Shown here: piece after piece, positions 1 to 44,199 of the stretch
Numbering within the stretch: the stretch's first letter is position 1
Layout of the letters: every line of letters starts with the position of its first letter
DNA from: Euprymna scolopes
Lineage: Eukaryota
Direction: 5' to 3' (one strand)
Assembly (NCBI GenBank): GCA_053919585.1
Contig: CM132789.1
Length of the DNA: 64,000 nucleotides
The notes under the pieces: generated by a model
Database searches by the model: none
Told to the model about the DNA's origin: nothing
Seen by the model: only the letters and a program-made list of their open reading frames with translations
Translations under genes and position numbers: made by a program

Positions 1-1650
1 TGGGGTTACCTCTGGTAAATGGTCGTTATACAACTTTGTTGAGTGTCTATGCACCCACTATGGATGCAACAGAAGATGAAAAGGTTGCTTTCTACCTTGC
101 TTTGTGCAGTGTAGTTAGACGCATTCCCTCTGTTGATAAGATATTCATTCTTGGAGATTTAAGTACTAGGGTGACAAGAGATTTTGAAACCTGGGACGTG
201 TTGGGTAAACATGGAGTGGGCAAGTGTAATAGCAATTGTCTGATGTTGTTTCAGTTTTGTTCGGAGATGGGTTTTAAAATCAGTAACACCGTGTTCTAGC
301 AGAAGGGCAAATACAAGACGACGTGGATGCATCCTGGTTCCAAAATGGTACTTGATAGACTATGTGTTAGTCAGAAGATGTGAGATGAGGGATATCTGCA
401 GTGTTCGTGTCATGCGGGGTGCAGAGTGCTGGACCGACCATCGGTTGGTCCGTGCAACGATTAAGTGTGTTGTGAAGCCCGAGATCAGGGGAGCTAGTGT
501 GGCTATCCCAAAGCGACTTAATGTTGCCCGTCTAAAGGACAATATTGTGAGAGATAAACTATTTAAGGAGATGGAAGAGATTAATTGTGAAAATACTTGG
601 CCTGCTTTTATGGAATCTGTCTATGAGGTATGTGAGAGAGTATTAGGTTGTGAGCGTGAACATCAGGATTGGTTCAATGAGAATGCAAATGAAATTCAGG
701 CTCTGCTTGATTCAAAAGCCAGTGAATTCCACGCATATCTCAGGGGTGGTTTGATGGATGATGTGCAAGATCGATTGAGGGACAAGTTTAAGGCAATCAA
801 GCACGAGGTGAAGAGGAGTTTGCGTAAAATGCAGGACGAATGGTGGAGACAGAAAGTTGAAGAAATACAGCTAGCCTCGGATTCGAACAAAACCAAAATC
901 TTATACAGCCTACTGTCCGCGTTTTACGGACCATCCAGATCACCTATCACTCCTCTGCGCTCGAAAGATGGTGGGGATCTTCTTCGAGACCCTACCGACA
1001 TTATTCATATTTGGAGGGAGCATTTCGATGACCTCCTGAACAGACCTTCTTACGTTGATCAGGAGTTCGTTAGGTCGATCCCTAGCAATCCGGTCAAGGA
1101 TATCTTGGCAAAGGTTCCTTCTCTCCAGGAGGTTGAAACAGCTGTCCATAAGCTGAACAATGGAAAGTCTCCTGACCCGAATCGTTTGCATGCAAAGATC
1201 TTTAAATGTTCTGGACCCAAGATGATGCAACGCTTAGCGGAATTGTTGCAGACAGCTTGGCGGGATGTATTCCGCAGGATTGGCGGGATGCATTGATGGT
1301 AGTCCTATACAAGGGGAAGGGTAGCAGAGATGAATGTGGGAACTATCGAGGCATCTCTTTCCTGTCAGTAGTATGTAGGTGCTCGATCATGCTAGACATA
1401 ATGCTGGAGCATATTGCTGATGATGGTTTGCCTGAGTCGCAGTGTGGTTTCAGAAGATGTCGAGGGACAGTGGATATGATTTTTACAGCCAGGCAACTGC
1501 AGGAGAAATGTACAGTACAGCAAAAGGGACTGTATCAGGGGTTCATCGATTTAACTAAGACCTTTTATACAGTCAATAGGGATGCTTTGTGGGAGATTTT
1601 GAAAAGGCCTGGCTGTCCTGACAAGTTTGTAACCATCTTAAAGCTTTTGC
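1..1650 (+). mobile_element. Decayed RTE-clade non-LTR retrotransposon (APE endonuclease plus N-terminal RT), cut off at ~1650 by a Penelope-like insertion
   Basis: ORFs 36-299, 352-1296 and 1206-1697 carry RTE motifs SVYAPT, ILGDL, IDYVL, GAECWTDH, YKGKG..CGNYRGIS, PESQCGFR, DMIFTARQLQEKC and FIDLTK, with stops and frameshifts. Confidence 0.93.
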
Positions 1651-3448
1651 CATCCGGCCTTCATCAGGTAGTTTGTATCGAACTGAGGAACTGTTAGTAA
1701 GGAGTCTCGAACCCAACCCTTTATTATTATTACGGACTCCAGCTAGGCTCTGGGACATAGTTGCTGATTCTCTGTTTTGAATGTTACTTTTCACTGCCGT
1801 CGTTCAGAATTGAACTCAGCACCTTTGGGTAACTGTAAACTTTAATACAACGTCTAGAACCACTCGGCCATATATAACTAGGACAATTCTTAGTTGGTTT
1901 TTGTTAATGCTGTTATTCGACGTTTTCTCTCTCTATCAGAGGTGTCCAAATTGCATTCAACGCTATGCTTGGTTTGCTCAGTAGGTTGTTATGTCCGAGC
2001 ATGTGAGCTGTTTCTTTAAGTTTTCTAACTTTCCAGTGGGTCTCTCTGTTTTTTTTAATTTTTACTTCATCCCATAGGGGGCGATGGTACCCCCTCTCCA
2101 TCCAGACATGGTTGGCTATACCCTATTTTTCCGTATCCCCTTTAGTTACCGCTTTTCAGTGTTATTCCACCTTTACTTTAAGGGGGCGGCATGTTTCACC
2201 CTTGTAAACCTTTCTGCAACTGCATGGGATGGAGTATACGCAGTTCTTTGTAATGTTCCCCTCCATGCGGGGCTTCACTCGTACCAGGTGTCATCTGAGT
2301 CTTAGCTCGCTCTTGAATACTGTCCTGATGTTGTAGGGGGCACGTTATCTCTGAATCTTTTCGGAGATGCCTCGTATTTATGGTAGGCAGAACGAAGGAG
2401 GTTTTTGGATTTCAGTATCCTCTCTTATACTATTAACACGTCTGATGGATAGTATGCTATCGGGGTAGTTGTTACAACGGAGGGTATTCTTCAAGCTGAC
2501 CATTTCTCGGTGGTATGTAATGGTGTCGCTACTTATTGTCTCTGCTCGATGTTGTAAGCAGCGTGCGATTCCATGTTTGATACTCTATGGGTGATGGGAG
2601 TTGAAGTTAAGGTATTGTCTGGTAAAGGTAGGGTTGCGATATACGAATGTCTTAAACTCATTATCAGTGCGTCATATGAGTATATCAAGGAAGGCCAGTT
2701 GGTTATCTTTTTCTTTCTCCATTGTGAACTGTATCGATAGTCTTGAGTTCACATGGTCTAGGGCAGCCTGGATGTCTTCCTGATGGGGTCAGAGTATGAA
2801 GGTGTCATCAACGTATCTTAGCCACATGGTTGGATTTAAGGGAGCTGAACCTAAGGCCATGTCTTCGAAGTATTCCATGTATATGTTGGCCATCACTGGT
2901 GATAATGACGAGCCCATAGCTAGCCCCATCCTCTTGTCGATATAGGTCAGTACCCATTCTTAATTAAATTGTTTCTATGCAGAATGTCAGCATTTCCATT
3001 AAGTTTGGCAATGTGCGCTCTTCTATGGAGAGGTCCGCAGCTAGTTTGTCTTGATTTACTGCTAGTGCCTCACTAGTTGGGACTTTAGTGAACAGGCTAA
3101 CCACATCTAGGCTTACCCTTTAGTTTGTACTGATGGGTGCTCCCTTGATCAGTTCCGTGAAGTGGGCAGAATTCTTTACATGTGTTGCTGACTTGCCTGC
3201 TAAGGAGTTTATTATATCCACAAGGTACCTGCTCAGTGGGTGGCATGCAGAGCCTCAGCAGCTCACTAGGGGTCTGAGTGGAATACCGTGTATCTTGGGG
3301 AGACCGTACACATGTGGTAGCTCACTGTAATGCTGGACCAGATGTCTATATCTCACCGGAGCGATGTGTTCCCGTAATAATAATAAAGGGTTGGGTTCGG
3401 GACCCCTAACAAACGGCTCCCCAGTTCGATACAAAACACCTGATGAAG
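1651..3448 (-). mobile_element. 5'-truncated Penelope-like retroelement (RT plus GIY-YIG endonuclease) with an inverted terminal segment
   Basis: Minus-strand translation gives GLAMGSSLSPVMANIYME (~2880-2930), LRYVDDTF (~2800-2822) and a GIY-YIG C-terminus (..RKLKETAHM.., ORF 1913-2101); ~77-bp inverted repeat at 1659-1735 and 3372-3448. Confidence 0.92.
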
Positions 3449-3729
3449 ATATATAACAACTAGTCTACTATACGTTTACTATAAACAATTTTACTGAACT
3501 ATTTACGTGATTTTAACTGTGATGAATTCGATTTTGTAATAGTTAATTTTCTAACGCTATTCAGCTTATGCAAGTACTAAGTCTGTAACATGCTGAATGT
3601 AGTATTCATAAGAATTTAAAACTTCATTTAATTTTACTATGTTTTCGTATGCAATGTCCAAACATTTTTTCTTATTTTCTATCCCTTTTTTCTCTCCTTA
3701 CAATAAAAAGATCAACAAGAAAAAAAAAG

Positions 3730-3731
<2 letters not shown>

Positions 3732-3797
<66 letters not shown>
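3732..3797. repeat. (TA)n(TG)n microsatellite
   Basis: Direct reading; it produces the spurious YI/CV-rich ORFs. Confidence 0.98.
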
Positions 3798-3798
<1 letters not shown>

Positions 3799-4626
3799 TG
3801 TTTCAATATTTGTGGTATAATGAAAATGGTAGCTGTCTATTTGTAAATATTCATACAAAACTCGAGGGGAGGGGTGCGGCCTTGCGCGTTCGTAAAGTAC
3901 GCATAAATATGATATATTCATTTGCCCAGATTTTGTATGTTATTATGGAGTCGTGGTTTGAAAAGTAAAAAAAAATAAATATATATAGGAGTCATTAGCA
4001 AGAATCGAAACCGTATGCAAAACTGTAACATTCATAGTTGATGACGCTTTCACTGTACCAACGTGACACGCATGTAGGCTGATTTCAAATTAAAAATAAA
4101 CTAAGATGTATGTACAAAATGTATAACGATCCTTTCAATTTTGACCAATTTTTTACCCCTTCAAAATTATTTTGACCGCTTAACGATCCATAAAAGAATG
4201 GTCCGTAAAAAGTCCAACCATCTGAGGCACATAGTGCAGCTCCGCCATTTTTAATTTCGGAAGATATAGAGTTTGAAAATAAGGAGACAAACATGTAGCC
4301 TGTTATATATTAAATAAATATATGCAAACGGCCAAAATGTGGGATGGGGTTTATGTTGATATATCTTACTTGCGTTTTAACTTAACTAGTTTCTTTCAGT
4401 ATAATATCAGAATCACTCTCTAAATTCCTTTATCAAAACAAGAAATCCCAATATATACCTAATGTTGGAATTTAGTGTATGTATGTGCTATCTACAAGGA
4501 AATGAATTATATTTATAAAGAAGTTAGTATAAGAAATCCTTAGTAGAAACTAGAGTAGACAAGCAGTTTTGTTAGTCAAAAACTGATGTAGGATCTCTGA
4601 TCGCTAACACTCCTAAATGTGGACCT

Positions 4627-7360
4627 AGTTAGTTAGTTATGGTAGTCTATCCATGTGGATGACGATGTCTTCTTCATCATTTTTTCTATCTTTTATTTAA
4701 CTCTGTTACTACGCTGATGACTGTGAAGCCCGATGCATGATATATACTGCAGGAAGACATGATTTCGTGTTTGATAAGGAGCGACCGCCGCTCGCCGACG
4801 CTTGTAGCTACTCGCTCATGCTCGTTTTTGAAGCATGCTCACCCGTCTACCGCATATGGGGCGTCAAATACCTCTGTCCGCTGCCAAAGTCTCCAAAATA
4901 TTGAAGGGAATATTGCAGCTCTTGAGGGTAAGCTTGATGCAGTCTATGTAGCGTTTCATCAGGCAGCCGACGTTTCGTCGGCCTAGAATGAGCTGTCAAA
5001 AGAGAACAAAAGAGAACTAGCCGGTTTAAGGGAATCCTGGTGACGTGGCCCAATCACCGCAGCTGACGACGGATAAGGTGTGACTCTAGATGGGCAACTC
5101 CAGCTCTCCAGCGAATCTCTGAATGGAACACTTTGTGCCACCAATGGAGGCCGAGGATCTGCTGTAGTCGTCTGATGTGAAATCACTCAGCAGCCCGATG
5201 TGATGGCGACGGAACACATGCCTCGAAACCGTACAGGATAGTGAGTATGACGACTGAGTTGTACACAGTAACCTTTGTATCGGTACTGAGTGGCCAAAAG
5301 CAAAAGAGGCGAGAGTAAGGCGGCTCTCAACTTCATTGCTAAGGTCGCAGGCGAATGAGCGATTGTAGCCAAGGTATGTGAAGTTACTATTTTTTAGAGG
5401 GATACTGTTCACAATGAATAAGGGAGTTGGAGACACATTTGGCAGGATTTCTGTGGTGTTGATAAGAAGGCCAGCTCATTGGTAAGTGTTGGAGATCACA
5501 TCAAGGTTGTGTATAAGTTCACTATGTGTATTACTAAGGAATGCAGCATACTGCAAGTCGAAGTGCTTTGTAGAGATTTTATTGTTGACCTGAAGACGTT
5601 ACATGTTAAAGAGACGTACATCAAGACAGTACTGGACAGCAATGCCATCATAAAGCTGAAGGCCACGGCACGAAACTAATACGACGGAAACCAGGAACAG
5701 GTTGACAATGATCGTAGCCAAGATGCATCAGCAGTTCACACTGACGTTCGTAGCGAAAGTTCCGATTCTGCACCTGACATAGTAACACGAGCATGCATGC
5801 CAGTATGAAACTGCTGGAGGACCGACAAGAAAGTAGGAGGGCAACCAAACTTCCGGAGAATTTTCCATAACAGCTCATCCTTCACGGTGTCCAAGGTCTT
5901 GGTTAGATATACGAAGGCCAAATTGAGCTCACGATACTATTAGCGACACTTATCCTGGAGGAGACGAGCAACAAAAATCATATAAGTAGCACAAAGCTCT
6001 CGGCAGAAGCTAAATTGTGATTCTGGGATGATAAGATTTATAAGAGTCTCCAGAAGTCAGGTGAGCTTGATCTTTGCCAATACTTTTCCGGCCACAGAGA
6101 GTAGAGAGAGGCCTCGGCTGTTGCGACAGTCAGTGCGGTTACACTTACGTTTGTAAATGAGGATGGTGTTAACATCCTTCCACTGCAGTGAGAGGCACTT
6201 TGCTGACCAGAAATCCAGGATGAACCGGTGGAGACACAGGAGGATGTCAGTTCCGCTACACTTAAGAAACTAAGCATGTATGCTGTATGTAAGTTATCTT
6301 GTTTTTTAGGCTTTAAATACCGTCCTTCACTTCGCTGATGAGTGGTGGGTTATCAAGCACGGAGATGGATGGTAGTGTGGAAATCACCGACAATGGAGGG
6401 ATCGGTGGAATTTATCTTATGAAGCAGCTTCCAAAAGTGTTCAGTCCATATTTCCAGGTTATCGCTCTTCTCTTTGATGAGATCACCATCCTTGCTACGC
6501 ACATAATGCATGGTGCGTTACATTGGATCATCTTTACTGCCTGGTAGAAACCGCTGGTGTCGTCAAGGTCCGCACTGCTTTGGATCTCTCTAGTCTTATT
6601 CATCCATCGTTCATTTTCCTCCCAACGCAATTATCGCTGCACTATGGCATAGAGGGAGCAGAAATACTCGTGGAGTGTGGGAGATGCTGGATTTCTAAGA
6701 AGGGCATCATGAGCGGCATATTTCTCACATATAAGAAAACCGATGTCCCCTGCACAATCGGTGACCCAGTCGTTGTGCCATCTCTCAGAGTAGCCAAGGA
6801 TTCATTCTGAGGCTCCATGAAGAGCGGTTGTGATTGATGACCATTCTGCCATGAGGGTAGTAGTGGTCACTGCTGAGAGCAGCAGAGGTAGAGAGGGACG
6901 GCGATGGCATCACGAAATTTGGCTGCAATTGCTGGATCCCGCAAGAAGACAGGTTGAGTTGTCGTTTTGGCTTTTGCCGACGATCAGAAGGACGTACCTT
7001 TAGTCGGAGACGAGCAAATCAGATAGTATTAGTGAAGCATTCAGCACCAGGCATGGAACGAGGCAGGAGCACGTTATGCACATCATAGTTTCGGCCGATG
7101 ACGAAATCGATAAGGTGCCGGTGTTTGAAACTTGGATGCATTCGGAATGTATTGTACATGTCACGCAGCTAAAAGATGGTGTTGGTAATAGTGAGACCCA
7201 GCTTCGCACTGAGGGACAGAAGTCGATGTCTTTTTACATTTCCAACTCCATGTCGTCCAATGTGTCCTTGTCATATCTCATGGGGTTTGCCAACTCTGGT
7301 GTTAACATCGCACAGAAGACTGATATTATCGCTGTATGGGGTGTTCCCGATGGTAGCCGT
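4627..7360 (-). mobile_element. Decayed RTE (BovB-like) LINE with a (TAAC)n tail
   Basis: Minus-strand fragments: MAFVYLTKTLDTV..LWKILRKFGCPPTFLSVLQQFHTGM, FTYLG, EIQSSAD..GFYQAVK, GHVTRIPLNRL; short tandem 3' tail (tagttagttagtta on the + strand at 4626-4639). Confidence 0.9.
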
Positions 7361-7819
7361 GACCGTTTCATTGAAACGTGTCTTCACGTCTTCCTACATC
7401 TATGGAAGAACAACACATCCATCGCTTAAAAAAGAACGGGAATAAAGATGATCTAACCAAAAATGGGAAAAATGGATGTGAGCATCAAGACAAAAACCCC
7501 TAAAAACAAGCTTTTGACGTCATGTATACTCTAGCTAAGTTAAAAATAAGAAAATAAAAACTATATTTCGCCTACGCTAAACTAAACAGCTCGATACACT
7601 GTAAACGTGCGTTCAGGTTAACCAGAAATTTTCACGTAAAATACGTCTAAATATCACTCAAATTTAACTCATCTTTCTCGATACACACACGAAAAATTCA
7701 CTCAATGTTCGTTAAAATTTGCCGAATAAATTGTAACTTTCTCCAGTTTAATATGCATTTTCAGGTTGTATGTAAAAATGAGAAAAAATTTAGAGAGCAC
7801 TAAATATCTTATTTTATTA

Positions 7820-8640
7820 ATCTTAATTTTGTTGCATCGATGAAATCACGTCTCTCATAACAACTAGAAAGCAATAAAAAACATAACGTTGCTCTTTCCT
7901 CTCGGTCGGTATCCAGGTGTACGAGGAAACCGAATCCAGAACAATGAACTGCATGTTCCACATACGAACCATGAAGCCTTCAACGAACTCACGCAATAAG
8001 CGCACGATCGCACAGTTGACAAAATCATGATCGATATCTCCTTCGCAGTCTTTGCATCGGGCATAACTAGATATCTCTGTAAAGCCTGCAGCGTAGAGAC
8101 TTTTGCACACCAGGACTGGATTTTATTGACAATCAGGTAAGTGATGCCTCGAAATTGTCGAAGCAGCTCATCCTAGGCGTTCAAGGCCATAATTAGCGGC
8201 GCTTGCATGGATTCAGGTTACAAAGCTCCCAGTTTCACATGGCTTGCTTTCGCGCCAGAGAACTTAAGAAAAAACACTAGAAATACTATTAAGGTTTGCG
8301 GGAGTAGAAGCACGGATTAACGGTAAAGGATAAGGGTATAACTGTACGAATTGCACACCTTCGCTCAACCCTTCAAGGTAAAGTTTGTCAAAGAGCATAA
8401 ATTGGCCTGAACCGTTTCTAATATTCCGCCCAATTTTTCTCCAGCGACAGATCATACTAAACCAGACGCCGAGTATCTTGCAAGGCACTTGCGCCCAGAA
8501 GTGGTATCTCCTTCCACGCACCAATGGACTTGTCGCAGTTCATTTTGACCCTTGTCACCTTTTTATACCTTCTTATTTCCATATCGACAATTCTCGTCTA
8601 GATACCGCTCGTCAAAAGAACGGGCATGGTGCCGACATAG
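7820..8640 (-). mobile_element. L1/Tx1-like LINE ORF2 remnant (end of RT plus CCHC zinc finger)
   Basis: KILGVWF followed by a frameshifted LEKNW; C-terminal RCKDCEGDIDHDFVNC resembles the zf-RVT Cys/His motif; many stops. Confidence 0.65.
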
Positions 8641-8989
8641 TCCGAGTATTTAATCGACGTTGACACAATACAATTTTATGAAAGAACTGGATTCACCCTA
8701 AGCCTATAAAGTAAAGTTTCACCGCTATCTCATAGAATATCCTTCAAAGCGAACACCCCTGACGAATAGATCTGGATAAATAGAAAGTCATCGTTTTCAC
8801 AGCATTCACCTCCACTAGCTTGCGAGTTTTGCATACAAGAAGCGAAGCCAGGAACAAAATAAAGGACCTAACCCTGTTAAGGAAAGAACAGCCTTTTGGT
8901 CACGATGATCGACCATATCAAGAGTTTGGGATTGGTTTAAATTAATCAGCCCATCTTCAGTGTCATCTTTGTTATGATCAAGCGTATCA

Positions 8990-10330
8990 TGTGCAAGTTA
9001 TCTTAGATAGCCCGGCTGTTAATAGAACAAATCGATAACTCTCTTGTCGATGACAAACATAACCGAAATCAGAATTATATTGCAAATAGCATCACAGTAT
9101 ATAATTTATATTCATCAAATGGACACAAAAAATACTTATGTAAATGCTTCGATAGACTGTGAAATATACCTTACTCCTATGGAGACATCAAAAGTAAAAA
9201 TGAAAACTGGGTGTGGAAGGTTACTAAATCACTGTATGGGTTAAACCATTGTAGTAAAAATCAGAGTCAAATATTTCATAATTATTTAATGAACAAAGAT
9301 TTTTAACAATTCCCAATTGATCTATGTTTGTACACTCGCCCTGTAAACAATGAATTACTGATTTTAGTCTCATGAATTGATGATATTTCAATCGTGGCAA
9401 ATTGTGACGTAATGGTAATTAGTAGAAAAATGGATTTACTTTAAAAAATACAAAAATAAACTAGCCGCCCTTGATAATATATCATGGTTTCTGAGCTTAC
9501 AATTTTCCTATGAAATAAGAACGATTAAAATTAATCAACCGAGATACATTGACAAAATCCAGTTTAAGTTTGGGGTGCAAGATAACAAGAAACTCACAAC
9601 GGCAGTTTAAAATAAGATAAATCAATAATATGGATCCAGAAAATCAATAATTGAGGATAGACTATATCGATAATTGAGTATAAACTAAATCATTAATTGA
9701 GGATAAACTATATCGATAGATCATAGACATTTAGTGGCGCCTTTACGCCCCCGTAAATATTATACGGAAAAATATCACAAGAAATTTCATTACATAAACT
9801 AAAAGATATAAAAACAACTAAACAAGTTCTTCGTTATCTAAAATAAACTAATAGCCTTTAGTATTTCGAAAATCTACATATTCTCTAAACTAAGATGGGT
9901 TATTATATTCATATTATGGAAGCGTTAAAGATAAAAAATATATATAAATGGATACAGTTTGAGACCCACTTTTTTCTTGAAACTCTAAAAAGCAGAAAAT
10001 TGTAGCGCTTTTTATTTATAAAGTCGAATTTGTAGCACCCTCATATTCTGCTTAAGAAGGTCTAATAATATAATAATTATATAGATGGTTTTGAAAATCA
10101 AAATTAACAAAAGGCCCCGCAGTAATTAATAATAACGAAGCAATCGCAGTCTTGGCACAGAACTTCTTCAAAGAAATAAACATATTAAATAGAACTTCAT
10201 AAGAAATGAAGTAGGGAATAGTAGCATTATTAGAAGCTTCATAGAATAGGAGAAACAGTAAAATATTATTTACGAAAACGGTGACAAAAATAAAACACAA
10301 AAGCTTCGTGCTTAAAGTTGTTGGAGTTTA
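8990..10330 (+). mobile_element. Highly decayed Ty1/Copia RT-RNase H remnant
   Basis: IHQMDTKNTYVNASIDCEIY (Copia HQMDVKTAFLN), DLCLY, IDDISIV (YVDD position) and SKKQKIVAL..EFVA (RNase H motif, ~9980-10040). Confidence 0.85.
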
Positions 10331-12189
10331 ATTTTAAAGAAATTAATTGGCAGAAATCCGAATAAAAATTCTAATTAAAATTAAATAGGTAAGAAAAATG
10401 GAACAAAGACATAAAACTGCACCCATTCTGTCTTCATTAATATTTTATTAATATTCAAAATATATAAAATTGTTTAAACATTTAATTCATAAAAAAATCA
10501 CATATTTGAAAATAGTTTTTCTTTTTTTTTTACAAATGCATAATGCATTTGAATCTGTATATATGTTTATCTCTTTTTTGAACAGAATGCATTTTAAAAA
10601 TAGCTAATTTAGTACATATTCATGTATTTTACGTAGAAATAAAAAGGCTTTACTCTTTAAATTTTATGCTCACACATTATTTGATATTTAAAAACAGACA
10701 TTACTTCCCCGTTTTTATTTTTATGTTGTTTGTTTTATCCGATAATTTGTTCTTACACATTTTAAAACTAATTTGAAACTGCAGAAACATTTTTATGATA
10801 GGTCTTGCAATACCTTTGGCATAATAATAACAAAGCATATATGATTATCAAAACCTAAAAGGTTCTATTTAAAGACAGGGGATATAGAAACTGACCGATC
10901 AAATGGATCCATGCTCTGCTATCGATTAATCTGAAAACGGATCCACTCCACAAACATCTTTTAGAATTATCGTACGTAATTTGGGGGGCATGTGAGAAGC
11001 AATTTGTTCTTCGTCTGTAAAGAGTTATGATTCAACATTATAGGAACCATTTTTTAAAATATTCTTTTTGCTTCGAAAACTAAAATGACTTACAACTGTA
11101 ATACATACGCAAAATATACATATATATACATATATATATGTATATATATATGTGTATATATACATATATATACATACAAATATATATATATATATATACA
11201 TATATATTGCGTATATATAAATTAGAAACAAGAAGAGGAAATGATTCTTCATTCGGGTTAAATTCTCTGAACTATATGTATAATTATGGAATAATTAGAA
11301 ACGCCCGTGATATCAAATGCTCAATGGGAAGAAATATTAAGAGAACCATAAAAATCTGGGTCGAAAAAAGTCATGATAAGAAAAAAACGAAAGAGTTTTC
11401 ATCGATTATATATGTTTCTACCACTAAACTTGCATTGTCATAAGAAATTAAGCAAAATGAACATCTTTTCAAGCAGTATTATTTTGTCTATGATTCATCT
11501 TACATGTTATGATTATGATATTCCATTTACTACATGCCTGCCAAAAATGTCAAGCAGAGCTTATNNNNNNNNNNNNNNNNNNNNNNNNNNNNNNNNNNNN
11601 NNNNNNNNNNNNNNNNNNNNNNNNNNNNNNNNNNNNNNNNNNNNNNNNNNNNNNNNNNNNNNNNNNNNNNNNNNNNNNNNNNNNNNNNNNNNNNTTTATT
11701 GACGTTGTATCCTGCCTATTAGAGACATTGACATCTATGACTCTGCATCTATCTCTTTTCCTCGAGATATTCATGAATGTATTTTTGCTCATCATCAAGA
11801 ACCCCATTCACGCTCTTCATCAAAAGTGTTTCATGTATTGCCGAAGACATTATGTATTGGCGTAGACAGTATAGTGCAGTTCTTTTCTGTCCGATCAGTG
11901 CCCTTACTTTGCGATTGCCCTGATCATTGTTTCAAAAGAAATCTTCTACTCATTGCAACGAGACACACTCCGCGGACATAATTTTTCCTGATACCTTCTT
12001 TATAACATCAATTGTCTGCTTTCCATGAAATCACGTTACTCTGATGTGTGAGACGGTGAAGTACGTTTTAAATCGTGCACAAGATCTCTCACAGACTAAC
12101 AGATGGAAGGGAGCATCTTACTTTTTATTTATTATATTGCGTATTATACAGGCAATACAAAAAACTAGCGTTTCATTTAGATACATGCT

Positions 12190-13918
12190 TTTGCAGACAT
12201 GACTGATTTCCATGACCTTTTGTTTCTTTAAACCTTCCAAAATGTCCCTTCCATATAATATACTTTCTAGAAAGTTTTTTTTTTCAGAAACAATTCTTTC
12301 TTAATGAGTGAGCATGACTCAGGATTGAAAAATAATTCGTGCTAATGTTCGCTCCACAAGACGGGTTTTTTAAGGTGGTCAGTGATAGAAGACGCGTATG
12401 TATTGGAAATTGCGTCTGTTTTTTTGTATACCCCATTTCTGATTTTGGTATGCACGTGTTATTAGATTCTTCAATCCACTCTTAATGTTGACCCACACAG
12501 TTGGCGCTGCAACTACATTCAAAATTGTAAATTGCATTATTATTATGATGGAGGGGGTTAAACATCTTTTCGAGAAGATGGCATTAACGTTCTCATAGAG
12601 ACCACAACGCGTACATTTGAAGCAAATAACAATGTTGCACTGTTGAGCTGATTTGCTTTGCAAATTTCTCACTGCTCCAAGTTGAGGTAAATGCAGATAT
12701 ATTTGGCATTTATCAACCGTTAGAATTATAGTTACAAAGGACTCTGCTATTTTCCTCTGCATAACTGACCTAATAACATCCAATGGGCACCCATTTTTGG
12801 AGAGGGTGTCAGTAATTATTTTTAATTCCTCATCAAATTTTGATTTTGAGCGGATCATAAAGGCACGATGTGTTAGGGTCCAAATTAAATTTATTTTACG
12901 TTTTCGGGGGCAAAATGAATCTCAACGTATGCAAAGTCCCATGAACGTAGGTTTCCGGTATATTGATGTAAGGTAACTGGATGGTGTTTCGTTACCCATA
13001 TATCAAGGAAAGCTATGGACAAATTAGACTGCCCTTCATATGTGTACTGTAATGTCGGGGTGCATCTTATTTAGTAAGGAGAAAAATCATTTGCCTCTGT
13101 TTGATTGTTGAAGATGAAAAATTGTTTAATAGGTCTAGAGAGCAATTTCTCTTCATAGAAACCCACGAAATATTCGCCATTAACGGGCCCAAAACTGAGC
13201 TCATCGGCACACTTTCTATTTGCCGATACATTACATCGTTGAAGCTGAATTAAATTGATGTAGTGGCAAATTTCATCAGCTCAACGAATATACTTTCAGA
13301 AATTGGAGGAGGCGATATCTGACTACGATATATAAAATCTGTACAGTTATCTATAGTCTCTGAAATCGGGACGCAAGTAAACAGGTTGCTTACGTCGTAA
13401 AAACAGTTATTAACAATCTTGGACCGTTGAATAAAGTCTGCAAAATGAAATTAATCTTTCAAACAGTATTTACTGTAATATTTTAATACCAGTTGCAAAA
13501 TATTTAAGATCCATTTTGCAACTTTATGCTGTGATGACACTACCATAGACAAAATGGGGCTTAATGAAATACCTACTATATGAGTTTTCGGTAAACCATA
13601 CAATCTAGGGCGGATCGACCCTGAAAGCCCTTATCTCATTAGCTATATCCGATGGAAGTCCAGCACTCTTAACCCACTTGATGAATTTTTTTCGAAATTT
13701 TGATTCTAAAGAGGCTGTAGGCTCATGAGTTTCGACAGGGTTCACTTTTATAAATTTATCCGTGTCATTAAATATGGTAGACAATTTGTCGACATAATCA
13801 TGATGATCTAGTATTACAACTCCTGAACTTTTATCTGGTCTAGTAATAACTAACGATTTATTTTTCCGCAGAGTTTTAATAAATGAATTATGCTCTTTGC
13901 GCCATTTAAACTCTGAAT

Positions 13919-41035: not shown

Positions 41036-42476
41036 TGTTCTCTTTTCATCGTTAGTTTCTCTTAAATTGTCTATCTGTTTTTAATACGTATTGCTGTTTC
41101 TACGTACTCTTTGTATTCAGTGTTATTGGCAAATGCCGCTGCGTTTTTTTATAAAGTAGTGATAGTGGGATTTGAAGTTTAGATATTGCCCAGTAAAAAT
41201 TGGCTTTGGATAAACGATGGCACAAAGCTCTGAACATTAAGAGTTATTAACACATCTATAAACAATAATGTTAGGTTACATCACTAAGTATGTAATTTCT
41301 ACACAGAAACACACCAGCTCCATTGTGTTGCCCAATTTGGGTGCAAGTGTGTTTCTTCGGGAGAGTCAGTCAGTTGGCAGTCAGTGGTCAGCTGCCGTTT
41401 TGGAAGCGGAGGTTAGAACATTAAGAGACACAGAACGAGCGAGAAGACCACGGAAACAGCAGTGGGGAAGCAATTGTCGTTGAGAGTAAGCATGCGGTAG
41501 TACAACGGATAAAAAGTGTGTTTTGCATTCGTTTCATTTAACATAGCTGATTTTGATGTTGGAACCTGAAGCTCTTCGACAACATTATTTGTACCTTGGA
41601 ATACGCCGCCAAAAAGACAGTTTCCTTCGTTTGGAACAGGTCAACTAGTGTTTCAATATTTAATAGCAGTAAATTTTCAACAAGAAAATTGAGTGAAATT
41701 TAAAATCCAATAGGTTAGTCGGTCACTACAATAATCAATCAAGATAGCCACTTAATCTGAGGGTCAGCAGGCCATTATGACAATCAGTTCGTCAATAAAT
41801 CAGTAAAATTCATCTTATCTCGATCAATGAGCCAAATAATGCACTCAGATTTGAGAGACTTGAAACGATTATCGATAATGCAATATATGGACCAATCGGT
41901 CCCATTGATTGGAGTCGTTATTTTTAGCGAGACGTCTGCGTTCGTGATTTTTTCCTGATAATTATTTAAAAAAAAAAGATAAATCACAAGATATTCAAAA
42001 AGAAAAGTAATCAAAGAAAGATGATTTATTAAACATCACTAAAAAATAGGTATTTAAAATTAATTACAATAAATATATTTTAACATAATCGACATGATCG
42101 AAGAGTAGGATATGTGTCATATTTAAGAATAAAAATATCATGTAAAAGAGAAAACATTTTATTTTGTACATTTATAACAGCTCATAAAATGCAGACACGT
42201 ATGTATATATTATGCATATATAAGCATTTATGTGAACACATAAATCTATGTATATAAACATTGGTACATACATATTTATATATTTATGAATATGAAAAAG
42301 GACGAACATCCTACATGGATGGTATTAACACCTCTTAATATATATACCCCTAATTAACAAACCTTCTCATCAACGAACACCTTTTACTATTAAAAATGCC
42401 CAGACTGAACAGGCGAAACGTTTTCGATTCTTTTACGCCTCTCCAGATCTGCTTTTAATATTATATATATATATAT

Positions 42477-42557
42477 CAGCTGCCAATAGCGTAATGGTTA
42501 GAAGCCTTGACTGCCGTATAAACGGTCGGGTTTCAATCCTGGCTTGAGGTAGTTGCC
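42477..42557 (+). promoter_or_regulatory. tRNA-derived head with internal Pol III promoter, repeated at +286 and +572
   Basis: A box TAGCGTAATGG at 42487-42497; B-box-like GGTTTCAATCC at 42529-42539 in a T-arm tcggg/cctgg; cagctgcc pairs with ggtagttg as an acceptor-like stem; ctgccgt loop hints at tRNA-Gly(GCC) ancestry. Confidence 0.8.
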
Positions 42558-42558
42558 T

Positions 42559-42613
42559 GTCTAGCTGCACTGATGAGCTGTGAAACAGCGAAACAGTACT
42601 GTATGTGGTTGAC
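42559..42613 (+). ncRNA. Type I hammerhead ribozyme, copy 1 (predicted cleavage after GUA, 42603)
   Basis: gtc(t)agctgca-CTGATGA-gctgt(gaa)acagc-GAAA-cag(ta)ctg-TA-tgtggttgac; all core nucleotides present. Confidence 0.93.
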
Positions 42614-42844
42614 TATAGTGCTCCTCACCTGAGTTGAGCATATTGAGAAGTGAAAAACGAATTACCATTAGCATATAAGCGACGCTCTTTGTGTAAACAA
42701 ATCGAGCGGAGGTATTTCGGACGATATCTAAAACATCGTTAAAAACTCACTACTCGTTCAAGCAGCCGCCAATAGCGTAATGGTTAGAAGCCTTGACTGC
42801 CGTATAAACGGTCGGGTTTCAATCCTGGCTTGAGGTAGTTGCCT

Positions 42845-42899
42845 GTCTAGCTGCACTGATGAGCTGTGAAACAGCGAAACAGTACTGTATGTGGTTGAC
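42845..42899 (+). ncRNA. Type I hammerhead ribozyme, copy 2 (predicted cleavage after 42889)
   Basis: Identical to copy 1. Confidence 0.93.
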
Positions 42900-43130
42900 T
42901 ATAGTGCTCCTCACCTGAGTTGAGCATATTGAGAAGTGAAAAACGAATTACCATTAGCATATAAGCGACGCTCTTTGTGTAAACAAATCGAGCGGAGGTA
43001 TTTCGGACGATATCTAAAACATCGTTAAAAACTCACTACTCGTTCAAGCAGCCGCCAATAGCGTAATGGTTAGAAGCCTTGACTGCCGTATAAACGGTCG
43101 GGTTTCAATCCTGGCTTGAGGTAGTTGCCT

Positions 43131-43182
43131 GTCTAGCTGCACTGATGAGCTGTGAAACAGCGAAACAGTACTGTATGTGGTT

Positions 43183-43185
<3 letters not shown>
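43131..43185 (+). ncRNA. Type I hammerhead ribozyme, copy 3 (predicted cleavage after 43175)
   Basis: Identical to copy 1; the array ends 4 nt after stem I. Confidence 0.93.
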
Positions 43186-43236
<51 letters not shown>

Positions 43237-43332: not shown

Positions 43333-43449
43333 ATATACGGTATATTCAGGTTGACATCCAGGTTCTTGTCAGATCAATGAAGTTAAGCAATGTTGAGTCT
43401 AACTAGTACCAGATGGATGACCATAAAGGCTAATTGAAGGCGCTGTATG
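43333..43449 (+). pseudogene. 5S rRNA-derived copy (pseudogene or SINE3 head)
   Basis: tacgg.ata..gttcttgtcagatcaatgaagttaagcaa..tagtac..gatggatgacc..ggcgctgta follows the eukaryotic 5S rRNA consensus over ~117 nt; TTTT at 43458-43461. Confidence 0.85.
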
Positions 43450-44199
43450 GGCTCCCCTTTTATCTTATCATGGTTCCCAGTCGTCGTGAACTTCACTTGT
43501 CACTGGTATTTAAGAACATTGACTCAGGAGACGAGTAGTTGGTTATTGCGCAACTACTGGCATAAAACATTCAATGTACAGGTACCCTTAAGTGGGAGTT
43601 CATAGTCTGNNNNNNNNNNNNNNNNNNNNNNNNNNNNNNNNNNNNNNNNNNNNNNNNNNNNNNNNNNNNNNNNNNNNNNNNNNNNNNNNNNNNNNNNNNN
43701 NNNNNNNNNNNNNNNNNNNNNNNNNNNNNNNNNNNNNNNNNNNNNNNNNNNNNNNNNNNNNNNNNNNNNNNNNNNNNNNNNNNNNTATATATTTCTCTGG
43801 TGGTAGAATTATCTAACATGAACACTCAAAACTCGTTATANNNNNNNNNNNNNNNNNNNNNNNNNNNNNNNNNNNNNNNNNNNNNNNNNNNNNNNNNNNN
43901 NNNNNNNNNNNNNNNNNNNNNNNNNNNNNNNNNNNNNNNNNNNNNNNNNNNNNNNNNNNNNNNNNNNNNNNNGATAGAAATGAGTGAGTTGGGAATAATA
44001 AGATTATTTAAAGATTTTTTTAAAAAATGCGAAATTTAAGAGAAAAATATCTAATTCTGTGCTATTCCGGGGAAAAAATGCAAGTTTCTGGAATTTTCGT
44101 CAAAGTATTTTTACCTGAGGCACACAGTTCGTCCAGCTGTGGAATATGTCTCCGTTCCCATCGTTCACATCGCAATTTTAAAAGGTTGCATTTCTCTTC

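What the first reader, a model, noticed from the sequence alone, without database searches (positions are those of the whole stretch)
42477..43189. Top candidate: self-transcribing, self-cleaving tandem element (tRNA-type Pol III promoter plus hammerhead ribozyme in a 286-bp unit)
Seen: about 2.5 head-to-tail copies with an exact 286-bp period, identical except for one base. Each has an A box (42487), a B-box-like motif (42529) and, ~20 nt later, a complete type I hammerhead (CUGAUGA, GAAA, GUA site). There is no ORF. Established: non-LTR retrozymes are tandem hammerhead repeats of a few hundred bp that give monomeric circular RNAs; Schistosoma Sm-alpha and newt satellite 2 are comparable hammerhead repeats, with Sm-alpha being SINE-like. 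Inference: a young, probably active non-coding replicon that carries its own promoter, is cut into 286-nt monomers (42604-42889, 42890-43175), circularises, and is copied back by a borrowed RT. The design has precedent, but I do not recognise this family and cannot confirm it is new without a search.
Basis: partly seen in the sequence, partly recalled or inferred. Interest (0 to 1): 0.92.

Follow-up and report, generated by a model that had tools for sequence, protein, structure and literature searches.

The report
tRNA-headed hammerhead retrozyme, high-copy family
This is one of several thousand insertions of a small non-coding mobile element, in which each 286-bp unit joins a tRNA-like promoter region to a self-cutting hammerhead RNA; it is a known kind of element, and its insertion pattern matches that of a Penelope-like retrotransposon in the same genome.

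Summary
Window 42477-43189 holds 2.49 head-to-tail copies of a 286-bp unit with one mismatch and no ORF. Each unit carries A- and B-box-like motifs and, 19 nt later, a complete type I hammerhead.

It is not a one-off. The hammerhead 32-mer occurs 15,938 times in this 5.9-Gb genome. In 28 of 29 arrays the 3' end is the same unit position, 14 nt past the ribozyme cut, followed by (TA)n. The 5' ends vary. This is a retrotransposition signature.

An abundant Penelope-like element (RT plus GIY-YIG) in the same genome ends the same way, at an internal ..CATA followed by (TA)n. A second family, with Rfam-confirmed tRNA and Hammerhead_1 hits 10 nt apart, has the same layout.

Best reading: a young non-LTR retrozyme, SINE-like as Schistosoma Sm-alpha, probably copied by a Penelope-like reverse transcriptase primed on TA repeats.

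Still unproven:
- Pol III transcription.
- Cleavage. The short palindromic helix III predicts a dimeric ribozyme.
- Circular RNA.

The hammerhead is below Rfam's threshold, and the tRNA model does not see the head. First-stage readers of this scan noted the same architecture in other windows of this genome. I class it as a new member of a known kind.

The parts
42462..42476 (.). (TA)n directly 5' of the array (15 nt)
   Evidence: 19 of 29 arrays of the family abut (TA)n at their 5' side
42477..43189 (+). Array of 2.49 units of 286 bp: 42477-42762, 42763-43048 and partial 43049-43189 (unit positions 1-141)
42487..42539 (+). tRNA-like head of unit 1: A-box-like 42487-42497, B-box-like / T-arm 42529-42539. 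Repeats at 42773-42825 and 43059-43111
   Evidence: the pair is found only here; 0.12 expected. The T-arm is 16/17 identical to that of family B, whose head passes the Rfam tRNA cutoff. The Rfam tRNA model and ARAGORN are negative on this head itself
42559..42613 (+). Type I hammerhead 1, cut between 42603 and 42604
42845..42899 (+). Type I hammerhead 2, cut between 42889 and 42890
43131..43185 (+). Type I hammerhead 3, cut between 43175 and 43176. It is complete because the array runs 14 nt past the cut
42604..42889 (+). Predicted 286-nt monomer RNA between two cuts (the second is 42890-43175). MFE -86.3 kcal/mol, z -3.0
43186..43189 (+). Family-wide fixed 3' end (unit positions 138-141, TATA), the proposed priming site on TA-repeat target DNA
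   Evidence: 28 of 29 arrays end here
43190..43233 (.). (TA)22 following the array (a tail, or the target microsatellite)
   Evidence: the family median is 37 nt

Best explanation
The array is one insertion of a young, very abundant, non-autonomous retroelement. It belongs to the non-LTR retrozyme / Sm-alpha-like SINE kind.

Shown:
- Each 286-nt unit has a tRNA-derived head with box A/B-like motifs, a type I hammerhead, and a 145-nt spacer.
- Copies are dispersed over all chromosomes in arrays of 1 to at least 16 units.
- Within an array the units are nearly identical.
- Arrays end at one fixed unit position 14 nt 3' of the ribozyme cut, followed by (TA)n.
- Arrays begin at variable unit positions, mostly next to (TA)n.

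Inferred mechanism:
- The RNA is made either from the head as a Pol III promoter or by read-through.
- It is cut by the hammerhead, which probably acts as a dimer through the 10-nt palindrome ACAGUACUGU.
- The monomers are probably ligated to circles, as in other retrozymes.
- A reverse transcriptase nicks a TA microsatellite and uses the TA 3' end, annealed to the UAUA just downstream of the hammerhead, as primer.
- It then copies more than one unit length. This could happen on a circle, on a multimer, or by end-to-end template jumps. It stops at a variable point.

The most likely enzyme is a Penelope-like element, because an abundant one in this genome shows the same end structure.
For: - Copy number and dispersion: at least 117 matches out of 636 candidates at 97-100% identity on many chromosomes. 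The 32-mer hammerhead segment with at most 1 mismatch occurs 15,938 times, against 0 for the reversed control.
- Ends: 28 of 29 arrays end at unit position 141 followed by (TA)n (median 37 nt). Their 5' positions range from 1 to 264, and 19 of 29 have (TA)n at the 5' side. There is no target-site duplication beyond TA.
- Divergence: 0.12% within arrays against 1.1% between arrays.
- Ribozyme: the type I fold costs -12.1 kcal/mol. The dimer cofold at -40.2 kcal/mol reproduces a double hammerhead with a 10-bp intermolecular helix III.
- An older copy at L064:1630-1969 keeps the helices through changes: G120A with C123U in helix III, and C85U and G91A in helix I.
- Head: the A+B box pair is present against a chance expectation of 0.12 per window.
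- Sister family B has Rfam Hammerhead_1 at 53.1 bits and tRNA at 33.5 bits, both over cutoff and 10 nt apart. Its ends also carry (TA)n.
- Penelope-like element: an 806-aa ORF with RVT_1 plus a C-terminal GIY-YIG. All 10 terminal copies end at ..CAACAATCATA followed by (TA)n, while internal copies read on into the ORF.
- RNA-type runs hold thousands of contigs of the family at depths of 10^3 to 5x10^5, against about 0 on the unique flanks.
- Literature: metazoan retrozymes (PMC7229834); Sm-alpha as a tRNA-like SINE with a hammerhead (PMC2770079); PLE clades that insert in (TA)n (PMC8557442).
Against: - The hammerhead scores below Rfam's gathering scores.
- The head is not recognised by the Rfam tRNA model or by ARAGORN, nor is that of a diverged relative.
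- Only 1 of 29 arrays starts near the predicted Pol III start.
- The absence of TTTT in the unit is not significant (P 0.36-0.56).
- The RNA evidence comes from assembled contigs only. With about 16,000 genomic copies, DNA carry-over or passive intronic transcription could give much of the depth. Some contigs run from the array into (TA)n and unique flanks.
- No RT-encoding element with this family's own hammerhead or tail was found. The PLE's hammerhead-like motif lacks CUGAUGA and is not seen by Rfam.
- The locus sample consists of the best BLAST hits, so divergence is underestimated and the 5'-end statistics are biased.
Confidence: 0.72

Rival explanations
1. An ordinary tRNA-derived SINE. 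It is transcribed by Pol III and copied by a LINE that tolerates or makes (TA)n tails. The hammerhead is a passenger, and the tandem form arises from read-through of master arrays.
For: Fixed 3' end with a simple-repeat tail and 5' truncation are classic LINE/SINE features. A box A/B pair is present. The review PMC7761336 itself calls metazoan retrozymes a kind of SINE.
Against: - The 3' end lies at an internal point of the repeating unit, not at a transcript end.
- Arrays are 1 to at least 16 units with near-identical units.
- Only 1 of 29 5' ends lies at the predicted Pol III start.
- The same end signature is seen on a PLE in this genome.
- Head-to-head inverted truncated copies occur (L068; family B on C3), as described for PLEs (PMC8557442).
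- No LINE was examined here, so this rival is not excluded.
Confidence: 0.17
2. Plain satellite DNA that spreads by unequal crossing-over or segmental duplication. The hammerhead and box motifs are relics with no role in spread.
For: Tandem head-to-tail structure with very high identity inside arrays.
Against: - Roughly 13,000 separate short arrays lie on all chromosomes.
- They share one 3' end and have unrelated flanks.
- Helix-preserving changes occur in an older copy.
Confidence: 0.04
3. Cargo of a DNA transposon that targets AT/TA sites, such as a Helitron or MITE carrying tandem repeats.
For: Insertion between TA repeats. Helitrons insert at A|T, and in molluscs they carry tandem repeats (my own knowledge, not tested here).
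Against: - The 5' ends vary from copy to copy.
- There are no terminal inverted repeats.
- The 3' end ..GACTATA is not a CTRR end with a preceding hairpin.
- Nothing but the repeat lies between the (TA)n runs.
Confidence: 0.03
4. Assembly artefact: a single unit expanded by the assembler.
For: Near-perfect repeats are error-prone. L068 holds a perfect 155-nt-arm palindrome that might be artefactual.
Against: Periods of 279-286 bp with 2-16 units recur at many independent loci.
Confidence: 0.01

Closest known systems
Schistosoma Sm-alpha / Sj-alpha SINE-like elements (Ferbeyre 1998 and Laha 2000 as cited in PMC2770079)
   Same: A tRNA-derived head (tRNAscan calls Sm-alpha copies tRNA-Gln pseudogenes) joined to a type I hammerhead. 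Non-coding, a few hundred bp, above 10,000 copies.
   Different: - Host phylum. This genome looks like a decapodiform cephalopod (46 chromosome-size contigs, 5.9 Gb); that is an inference.
- Sequence similarity to Sm-alpha could not be tested.
- The head here is too decayed for tRNA models.
- The (TA)n-linked fixed 3' end is shown here; I do not know it for Sm-alpha.
Metazoan non-LTR retrozymes of Acropora, Mytilus and Ambystoma (PMC7229834, PMC7761336)
   Same: Tandem units of 170-400 nt with a type I hammerhead. No LTR, PBS, PPT or ORF. GC below 50%. Abundant in transcriptome data. The monomer is predicted to be well folded (z -3.0).
   Different: - No Pol III head is described for those.
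- Circular RNA is shown for them and not tested here.
- The paper says most invertebrate retrozyme hammerheads have a stable helix III, whereas this one has the weak palindromic helix III typical of amphibian and PLE ribozymes.
Penelope-like elements with hammerheads in pseudo-LTRs; clades inserting in (TA)n (PMC8557442)
   Same: Partial tandem copies, inverted truncated copies, insertion at (TA)n, and a hammerhead(-like) motif shortly before the 3' end. The PLE of this genome ends at an internal ..CATA followed by (TA)n, just as the arrays end at ..CTATA followed by (TA)n.
   Different: - No ORF here.
- There is no sequence similarity between the array and the 806-aa PLE beyond the end motif.
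- The clade of that PLE is undetermined. Its EN appears to hold a CxxC..H..HH pattern and its linker has no Cys, which does not fit the description of Hydra.
Family B of the same genome (about 410-bp unit, e.g. L035-L043)
   Same: Same order of parts: tRNA-like head, about 10-20 nt, type I hammerhead, then an end at an ATA motif followed by (TA)n. The T-arm is 16/17 identical.
   Different: Otherwise unrelated in sequence. Its hammerhead and head pass the Rfam cutoffs. It has two alternative 3' stops.

Membership tests
Hammerhead ribozyme, type I (Rfam RF00163) | Conserved core CUGANGA ... GAAA and an NUH cleavage triplet | tested here: met
   CUGAUGA, GAAA and GUA are read directly in all three units
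Hammerhead ribozyme, type I (Rfam RF00163) | Three helices, with helix I open and helices II and III closed | tested here: met
   Helix I is 10 bp with a bulged U. Helix II is 5 bp with a GAA loop. Helix III is 3-4 bp. The structure costs -12.1 kcal/mol, and helices I and II appear in the MFE. The type III reading has no helix I
Hammerhead ribozyme, type I (Rfam RF00163) | Score at or above the curated gathering score | tested here: not met
   No hit at gathering. The best clan hit is RF00008 at 22.7 bits against 48.5. Family B in the same genome reaches 53.1 against 34
Hammerhead ribozyme, type I (Rfam RF00163) | Self-cleavage | not testable with these tools
   Needs in vitro transcription of monomeric and dimeric constructs
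Non-LTR retrozyme (Cervera and de la Pena 2020) | Short tandem non-coding repeats, each with a type I hammerhead, lacking LTR, PBS and PPT | tested here: met
Non-LTR retrozyme (Cervera and de la Pena 2020) | Dispersed multi-copy family with signs of retrotransposition | tested here: met
   15,938 hammerhead copies. Fixed 3' end and variable 5' ends
Non-LTR retrozyme (Cervera and de la Pena 2020) | Expressed as unit-length linear and circular RNA | tested here: inconclusive
   The family is abundant in contigs of RNA-type runs. Contigs give no ends, no direction and no test of circularity
tRNA-derived SINE (Sm-alpha-like) | Head derived from a tRNA with internal Pol III boxes A and B | tested here: inconclusive
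   The box pair is present and non-random, and the T-arm is shared with the tRNA-positive family B. The Rfam tRNA model and ARAGORN are negative on this head
tRNA-derived SINE (Sm-alpha-like) | Copies begin at the Pol III start and end in a tail shared with the partner element | tested here: not met
   5' ends are scattered and only the window's array starts at unit position 1. The 3' end plus (TA)n is constant, but no partner with the same 3' sequence was found
PLE-dependent non-autonomous element | Same target and end structure as an autonomous Penelope-like element of the genome | tested here: met
   PLE terminal copies end at an internal ..CATA followed by (TA)n in 10 of 10 cases. Arrays end at ..CTATA followed by (TA)n in 28 of 29
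PLE-dependent non-autonomous element | Shared 3' recognition sequence or hammerhead with the autonomous element | tested here: not met
   No similarity to the 806-aa PLE beyond the ATA end. Its hammerhead-like motif is non-canonical.

The most novel reading that the evidence does not exclude
Decapodiform-type cephalopod genomes, reported to have almost no SINEs (PMC13218726), in fact carry a multi-family system of Pol III-headed hammerhead elements with tens of thousands of copies.

Their RNAs would be cut by dimeric hammerheads. A Penelope-like RT would copy them after initiating internally, at a UAUA-type site just downstream of the ribozyme, on nicked TA microsatellites. The hammerhead region would itself be the module the RT recognises, and tandem arrays would be the direct product of copying a circular or end-joined template.
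Probability: 0.33. Interest if true: 0.65.

Novelty: new member of a known kind. Interest (0 to 1): 0.45.

Why it matters
Which enzyme spreads the animal hammerhead repeats (retrozymes), and what the ribozyme is for, are open questions. The literature only suggests LINEs or Penelope-like elements.

Here a very young family of about 16,000 copies sits beside an intact, abundant Penelope-like element. They share the same target (TA repeats) and the same odd feature, a 3' end at an internal ATA site shortly after the ribozyme. That makes the partnership testable, both by a genome-wide census and in a retrotransposition assay.

It also shows that repeat annotation of such genomes may be missing a whole class of tRNA-headed short elements.

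Tried and rejected
- Rfam at gathering score over the whole window gave nothing.
- The Rfam tRNA model on the head and on a diverged relative gave nothing. ARAGORN on the window and on 11 loci also gave nothing.
- Rfam over 40 kb of PLE loci returned only microsatellite-driven miRNA noise.
- Rfam on the PLE's hammerhead-like motif gave no hammerhead, so I do not call that motif a ribozyme.
- The type III reading suggested by Rfam's best hit is rejected. Its helix I would be 8 nt with no pairing.
- Absence of TTTT as a Pol III signature is not significant for this family, although it is for family B.
- 5' ends at the ribozyme cut (position 128) or at the Pol III start showed no enrichment. The apparent excess of 5' ends in positions 1-119 is largely a sampling bias of the BLAST-ranked loci. 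Only a cluster at 82-108 remains (P about 0.009).
- No target-site duplications were found beyond (TA)n.
- Read laying gave only assembled contigs, so it yielded no read ends, strand or circle evidence.
- The sigma-70 promoter and terminator scan is irrelevant for a eukaryote and sits at chance level.
- Reading Ferbeyre 1998 failed because the paper is not held.

Full report
**1. The observation**

- Window 42477-43189 holds 2.49 head-to-tail copies of a 286-bp unit. TRF reports 99% matches and no indels.
- A base-by-base comparison finds one difference, 42481 T against C.
- The array is bounded by (TA)n on both sides: 42462-42476 and 43190-43233.
- No ORF longer than 45 aa overlaps it.

**2. 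The head**

- Each unit has TAGCGTAATGG, one mismatch to the box A consensus.
- 31 nt later it has GGTTTCAATCC, two mismatches to box B. This second motif sits in a 5-bp stem with a 7-nt loop, like a T-arm.
- With these tolerances and 24-45 nt spacing, the pair occurs in the 64-kb window only at the three units. Shuffles give 0.12.
- The Rfam tRNA model and ARAGORN do not recognise the head.
- 'tRNA-derived' therefore rests on the box pair and on the comparison with family B in section 5.

**3. The ribozyme**

In unit numbering:
- The core CUGAUGA is at 94-100.
- Helix II pairs 101-105 with 109-113.
- GAAA is at 114-117.
- Helix III is ACAG/CUGU at 117-126.
- The cut follows GUA at A127|U128.
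- Helix I pairs 128-137 with 83-93, giving 10 bp with U86 bulged.
- In the window the cuts fall at 42603|42604, 42889|42890 and 43175|43176.

Rfam results:
- There is no hit at gathering score.
- The best sub-threshold hit is the type III model at 22.7 bits against 48.5.
- That hit aligns only the core, helix II and part of helix III, and leaves helix I empty. I reject the type III topology.

Folding:
- The type I structure is energetically reasonable at -12.1 kcal/mol, against an MFE of -15.5 kcal/mol that shares helices I and II.
- Helix III is a 10-nt palindrome, ACAGUACUGU.
- Co-folding two copies gives the classical double hammerhead with a 10-bp intermolecular helix III, at -40.2 kcal/mol.
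- This is the arrangement described for newt and axolotl hammerheads and for Penelope-like hammerheads (PMC7229834, PMC7761336).

Older copy:
- An 82%-identical copy at L064:1630-1969 has helix III CAAUAUUG, changed on both sides.
- Its two helix I changes also keep pairing.

**4. The family**

- The genome is 5.9 Gb with 46 chromosome-size contigs.
- The unit matches at 97-100% on many chromosomes.
- A 32-mer of the hammerhead with at most one mismatch occurs 15,938 times. The reversed control occurs 0 times.
- On the first 74 Mb of contig 1, 100 hits fall in about 82 loci. This suggests roughly 13,000 loci genome-wide.

For 29 arrays both ends could be read:
- 28 end at unit position 141, ..GACTATA. 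This is 14 nt 3' of the ribozyme cut.
- Each of these is followed by (TA)n, with a median of 37 nt.
- The 5' ends lie at unit positions 1 to 264.
- 19 arrays abut (TA)n on the 5' side.
- No target-site duplication is visible beyond TA.

Other measurements:
- Units differ by 0.12% within arrays and by 1.1% between arrays.
- The loci were the best BLAST hits, so the true family divergence is higher.
- The window's copy differs from the sampled consensus at two helix I positions, 90 and 133.

A fixed 3' end, a simple-repeat tail or target, and variable 5' ends are the signature of target-primed reverse transcription.

**5. Context in the genome**

Canonical hammerheads:
- The Rfam Hammerhead_1 model finds many canonical type I ribozymes (73 of 74 scored candidates pass).

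Family B:
- Family B has a unit of about 410 bp.
- On one strand and 10 nt apart it has a tRNA hit at 33.5 bits (cutoff 29) and a Hammerhead_1 hit at 53.1 bits (cutoff 34).
- It shares with the 286-bp family only the T-arm (16/17) and the ribozyme core. The layout of head then hammerhead is the same in both.
- Family B ends at either of two internal ATA motifs followed by (TA)n.
- It avoids TTTT (P about 0.005-0.01). For the 286-bp family this is not significant.

Earlier notes:
- First-stage notes of this scan describe further families of the same layout in other windows of this genome. They are unchecked, and I use them only as agreement.

**6. A candidate helper**

- The GIY-YIG Pfam model finds 14,709 candidates in the genome.
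[quoted passage not shown] This is a Penelope-like element.
- Copies are about 99% identical. They form partial tandems with about 720-bp pseudo-LTRs, and inverted pairs.
- In 10 of 10 terminal copies the element ends at ..CAACAATCATA followed by (TA)n. In internal copies the same point reads on into the ORF.
- Like the arrays, it therefore ends at an internal ATA site of its repeating unit, about 63 nt after a conserved hammerhead-like motif.
- That motif lacks CUGAUGA and is not seen by Rfam.
- Craig et al. (PMC8557442) report (TA)n insertion for the Hydra and Naiad clades of PLEs. I could not assign this element's clade.
- No RT-encoding element with this family's own hammerhead or tail was found. 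Further loci could not be fetched.

**7. RNA**

- Four RNA-type runs, one of them a recorded poly-A RNA-seq library, hold 80 to 12,308 contigs of the family.
- Summed depths reach 10^3 to 5x10^5 on the array and about 0 on the unique flanks.
- With about 16,000 genomic copies this could come from real expression, from passive transcription of intronic copies, or from some DNA carry-over.
- Some contigs run from the array end into (TA)n and other flanks.
- Contigs give no ends, strand or circles. Transcription is likely; its source, cleavage and circularisation remain untested.

**8. Mechanism**

Shown:
- The anatomy.
- The copy number.
- The end structure.
- The shared signature with the PLE.

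Inferred:
- The RNA is cut by a dimeric hammerhead into 286-nt monomers, 42604-42889 and 42890-43175. The monomer fold has z -3.0.
- An RT nicks a TA microsatellite and primes on the UAUA at unit positions 138-141.
- It copies more than one unit length, from a circle, a multimer or by template jumps.
- It ends at a variable point.

Unexplained:
- All arrays use position 141 and never the other TATA-like sites of the unit.
- 5' ends cluster at positions 82-108 (P about 0.009 after allowing for sampling bias).

**9. Comparison and novelty**

- The kind is known: Sm-alpha/Sj-alpha of schistosomes (a tRNA-like SINE with a hammerhead, PMC2770079) and metazoan non-LTR retrozymes (PMC7229834).
- This is a new family in a new host group.
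- It adds a clear (TA)n-linked insertion signature shared with a resident PLE.
- A cuttlefish genome paper states that decapodiform genomes contain almost no SINEs (PMC13218726). If this genome is of that group, which I infer only from its size and 46 large contigs, such elements are being overlooked.
- Verdict: a real, ordinary-in-kind but informative element, and a new member of a known kind.

Noticed in passing
window 43333-43451 (+): Full-length but sub-threshold 5S rRNA-like sequence (RF00001 23.4 bits against 38, E 0.014). It lies 100 nt after the array's (TA)n and has high depth in RNA-run contigs. Probably the head of a 5S-derived SINE.
   Followed up: partly
L035-L043 (G000:C8:10.432-10.436 Mb) and L031-L050: Family B: tandem unit of about 410 bp with Rfam-positive tRNA-like head (anticodon loop reads UGC) and Hammerhead_1, 10 nt apart. 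No TTTT in the unit (P about 0.005-0.01). Two alternative 3' stops, each followed by (TA)n.
   Followed up: partly
L063-L067 (e.g. L064:4790-7207): Very abundant young Penelope-like element: 806-aa RVT_1 plus GIY-YIG ORF, about 720-bp pseudo-LTRs, inverted pairs. Terminal copies end at ..CAACAATCATA followed by (TA)n. It has a conserved non-canonical hammerhead-like motif just upstream of the ORF and again about 490 nt after it.
   Followed up: partly
L068:2447-2756: Perfect palindrome with 155-nt arms and no spacer, made of two 58-nt truncated copies of a deleted variant lying head to head within (TA)n. Either a PLE-style inverted insertion or an assembly artefact.
   Followed up: no
L076:1560-1790: Decayed relative of the 286-bp family (core CCGAUAAG, canonical box B GGTTCGATCC). 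It is joined through (TA)6 to the 3' part of family B, starting 2 nt before B's ribozyme cut. Either a nested insertion or a template-switch chimera.
   Followed up: no
G000:C11:1.68-2.16 Mb: Dense cluster of more than 60 high-scoring tRNA genes (64-80 bits), nearly all on one strand.
   Followed up: no
window 43610-43785 and 43841 onward: Runs of N (masked or gaps) shortly after the array. Left as they are.
   Followed up: no
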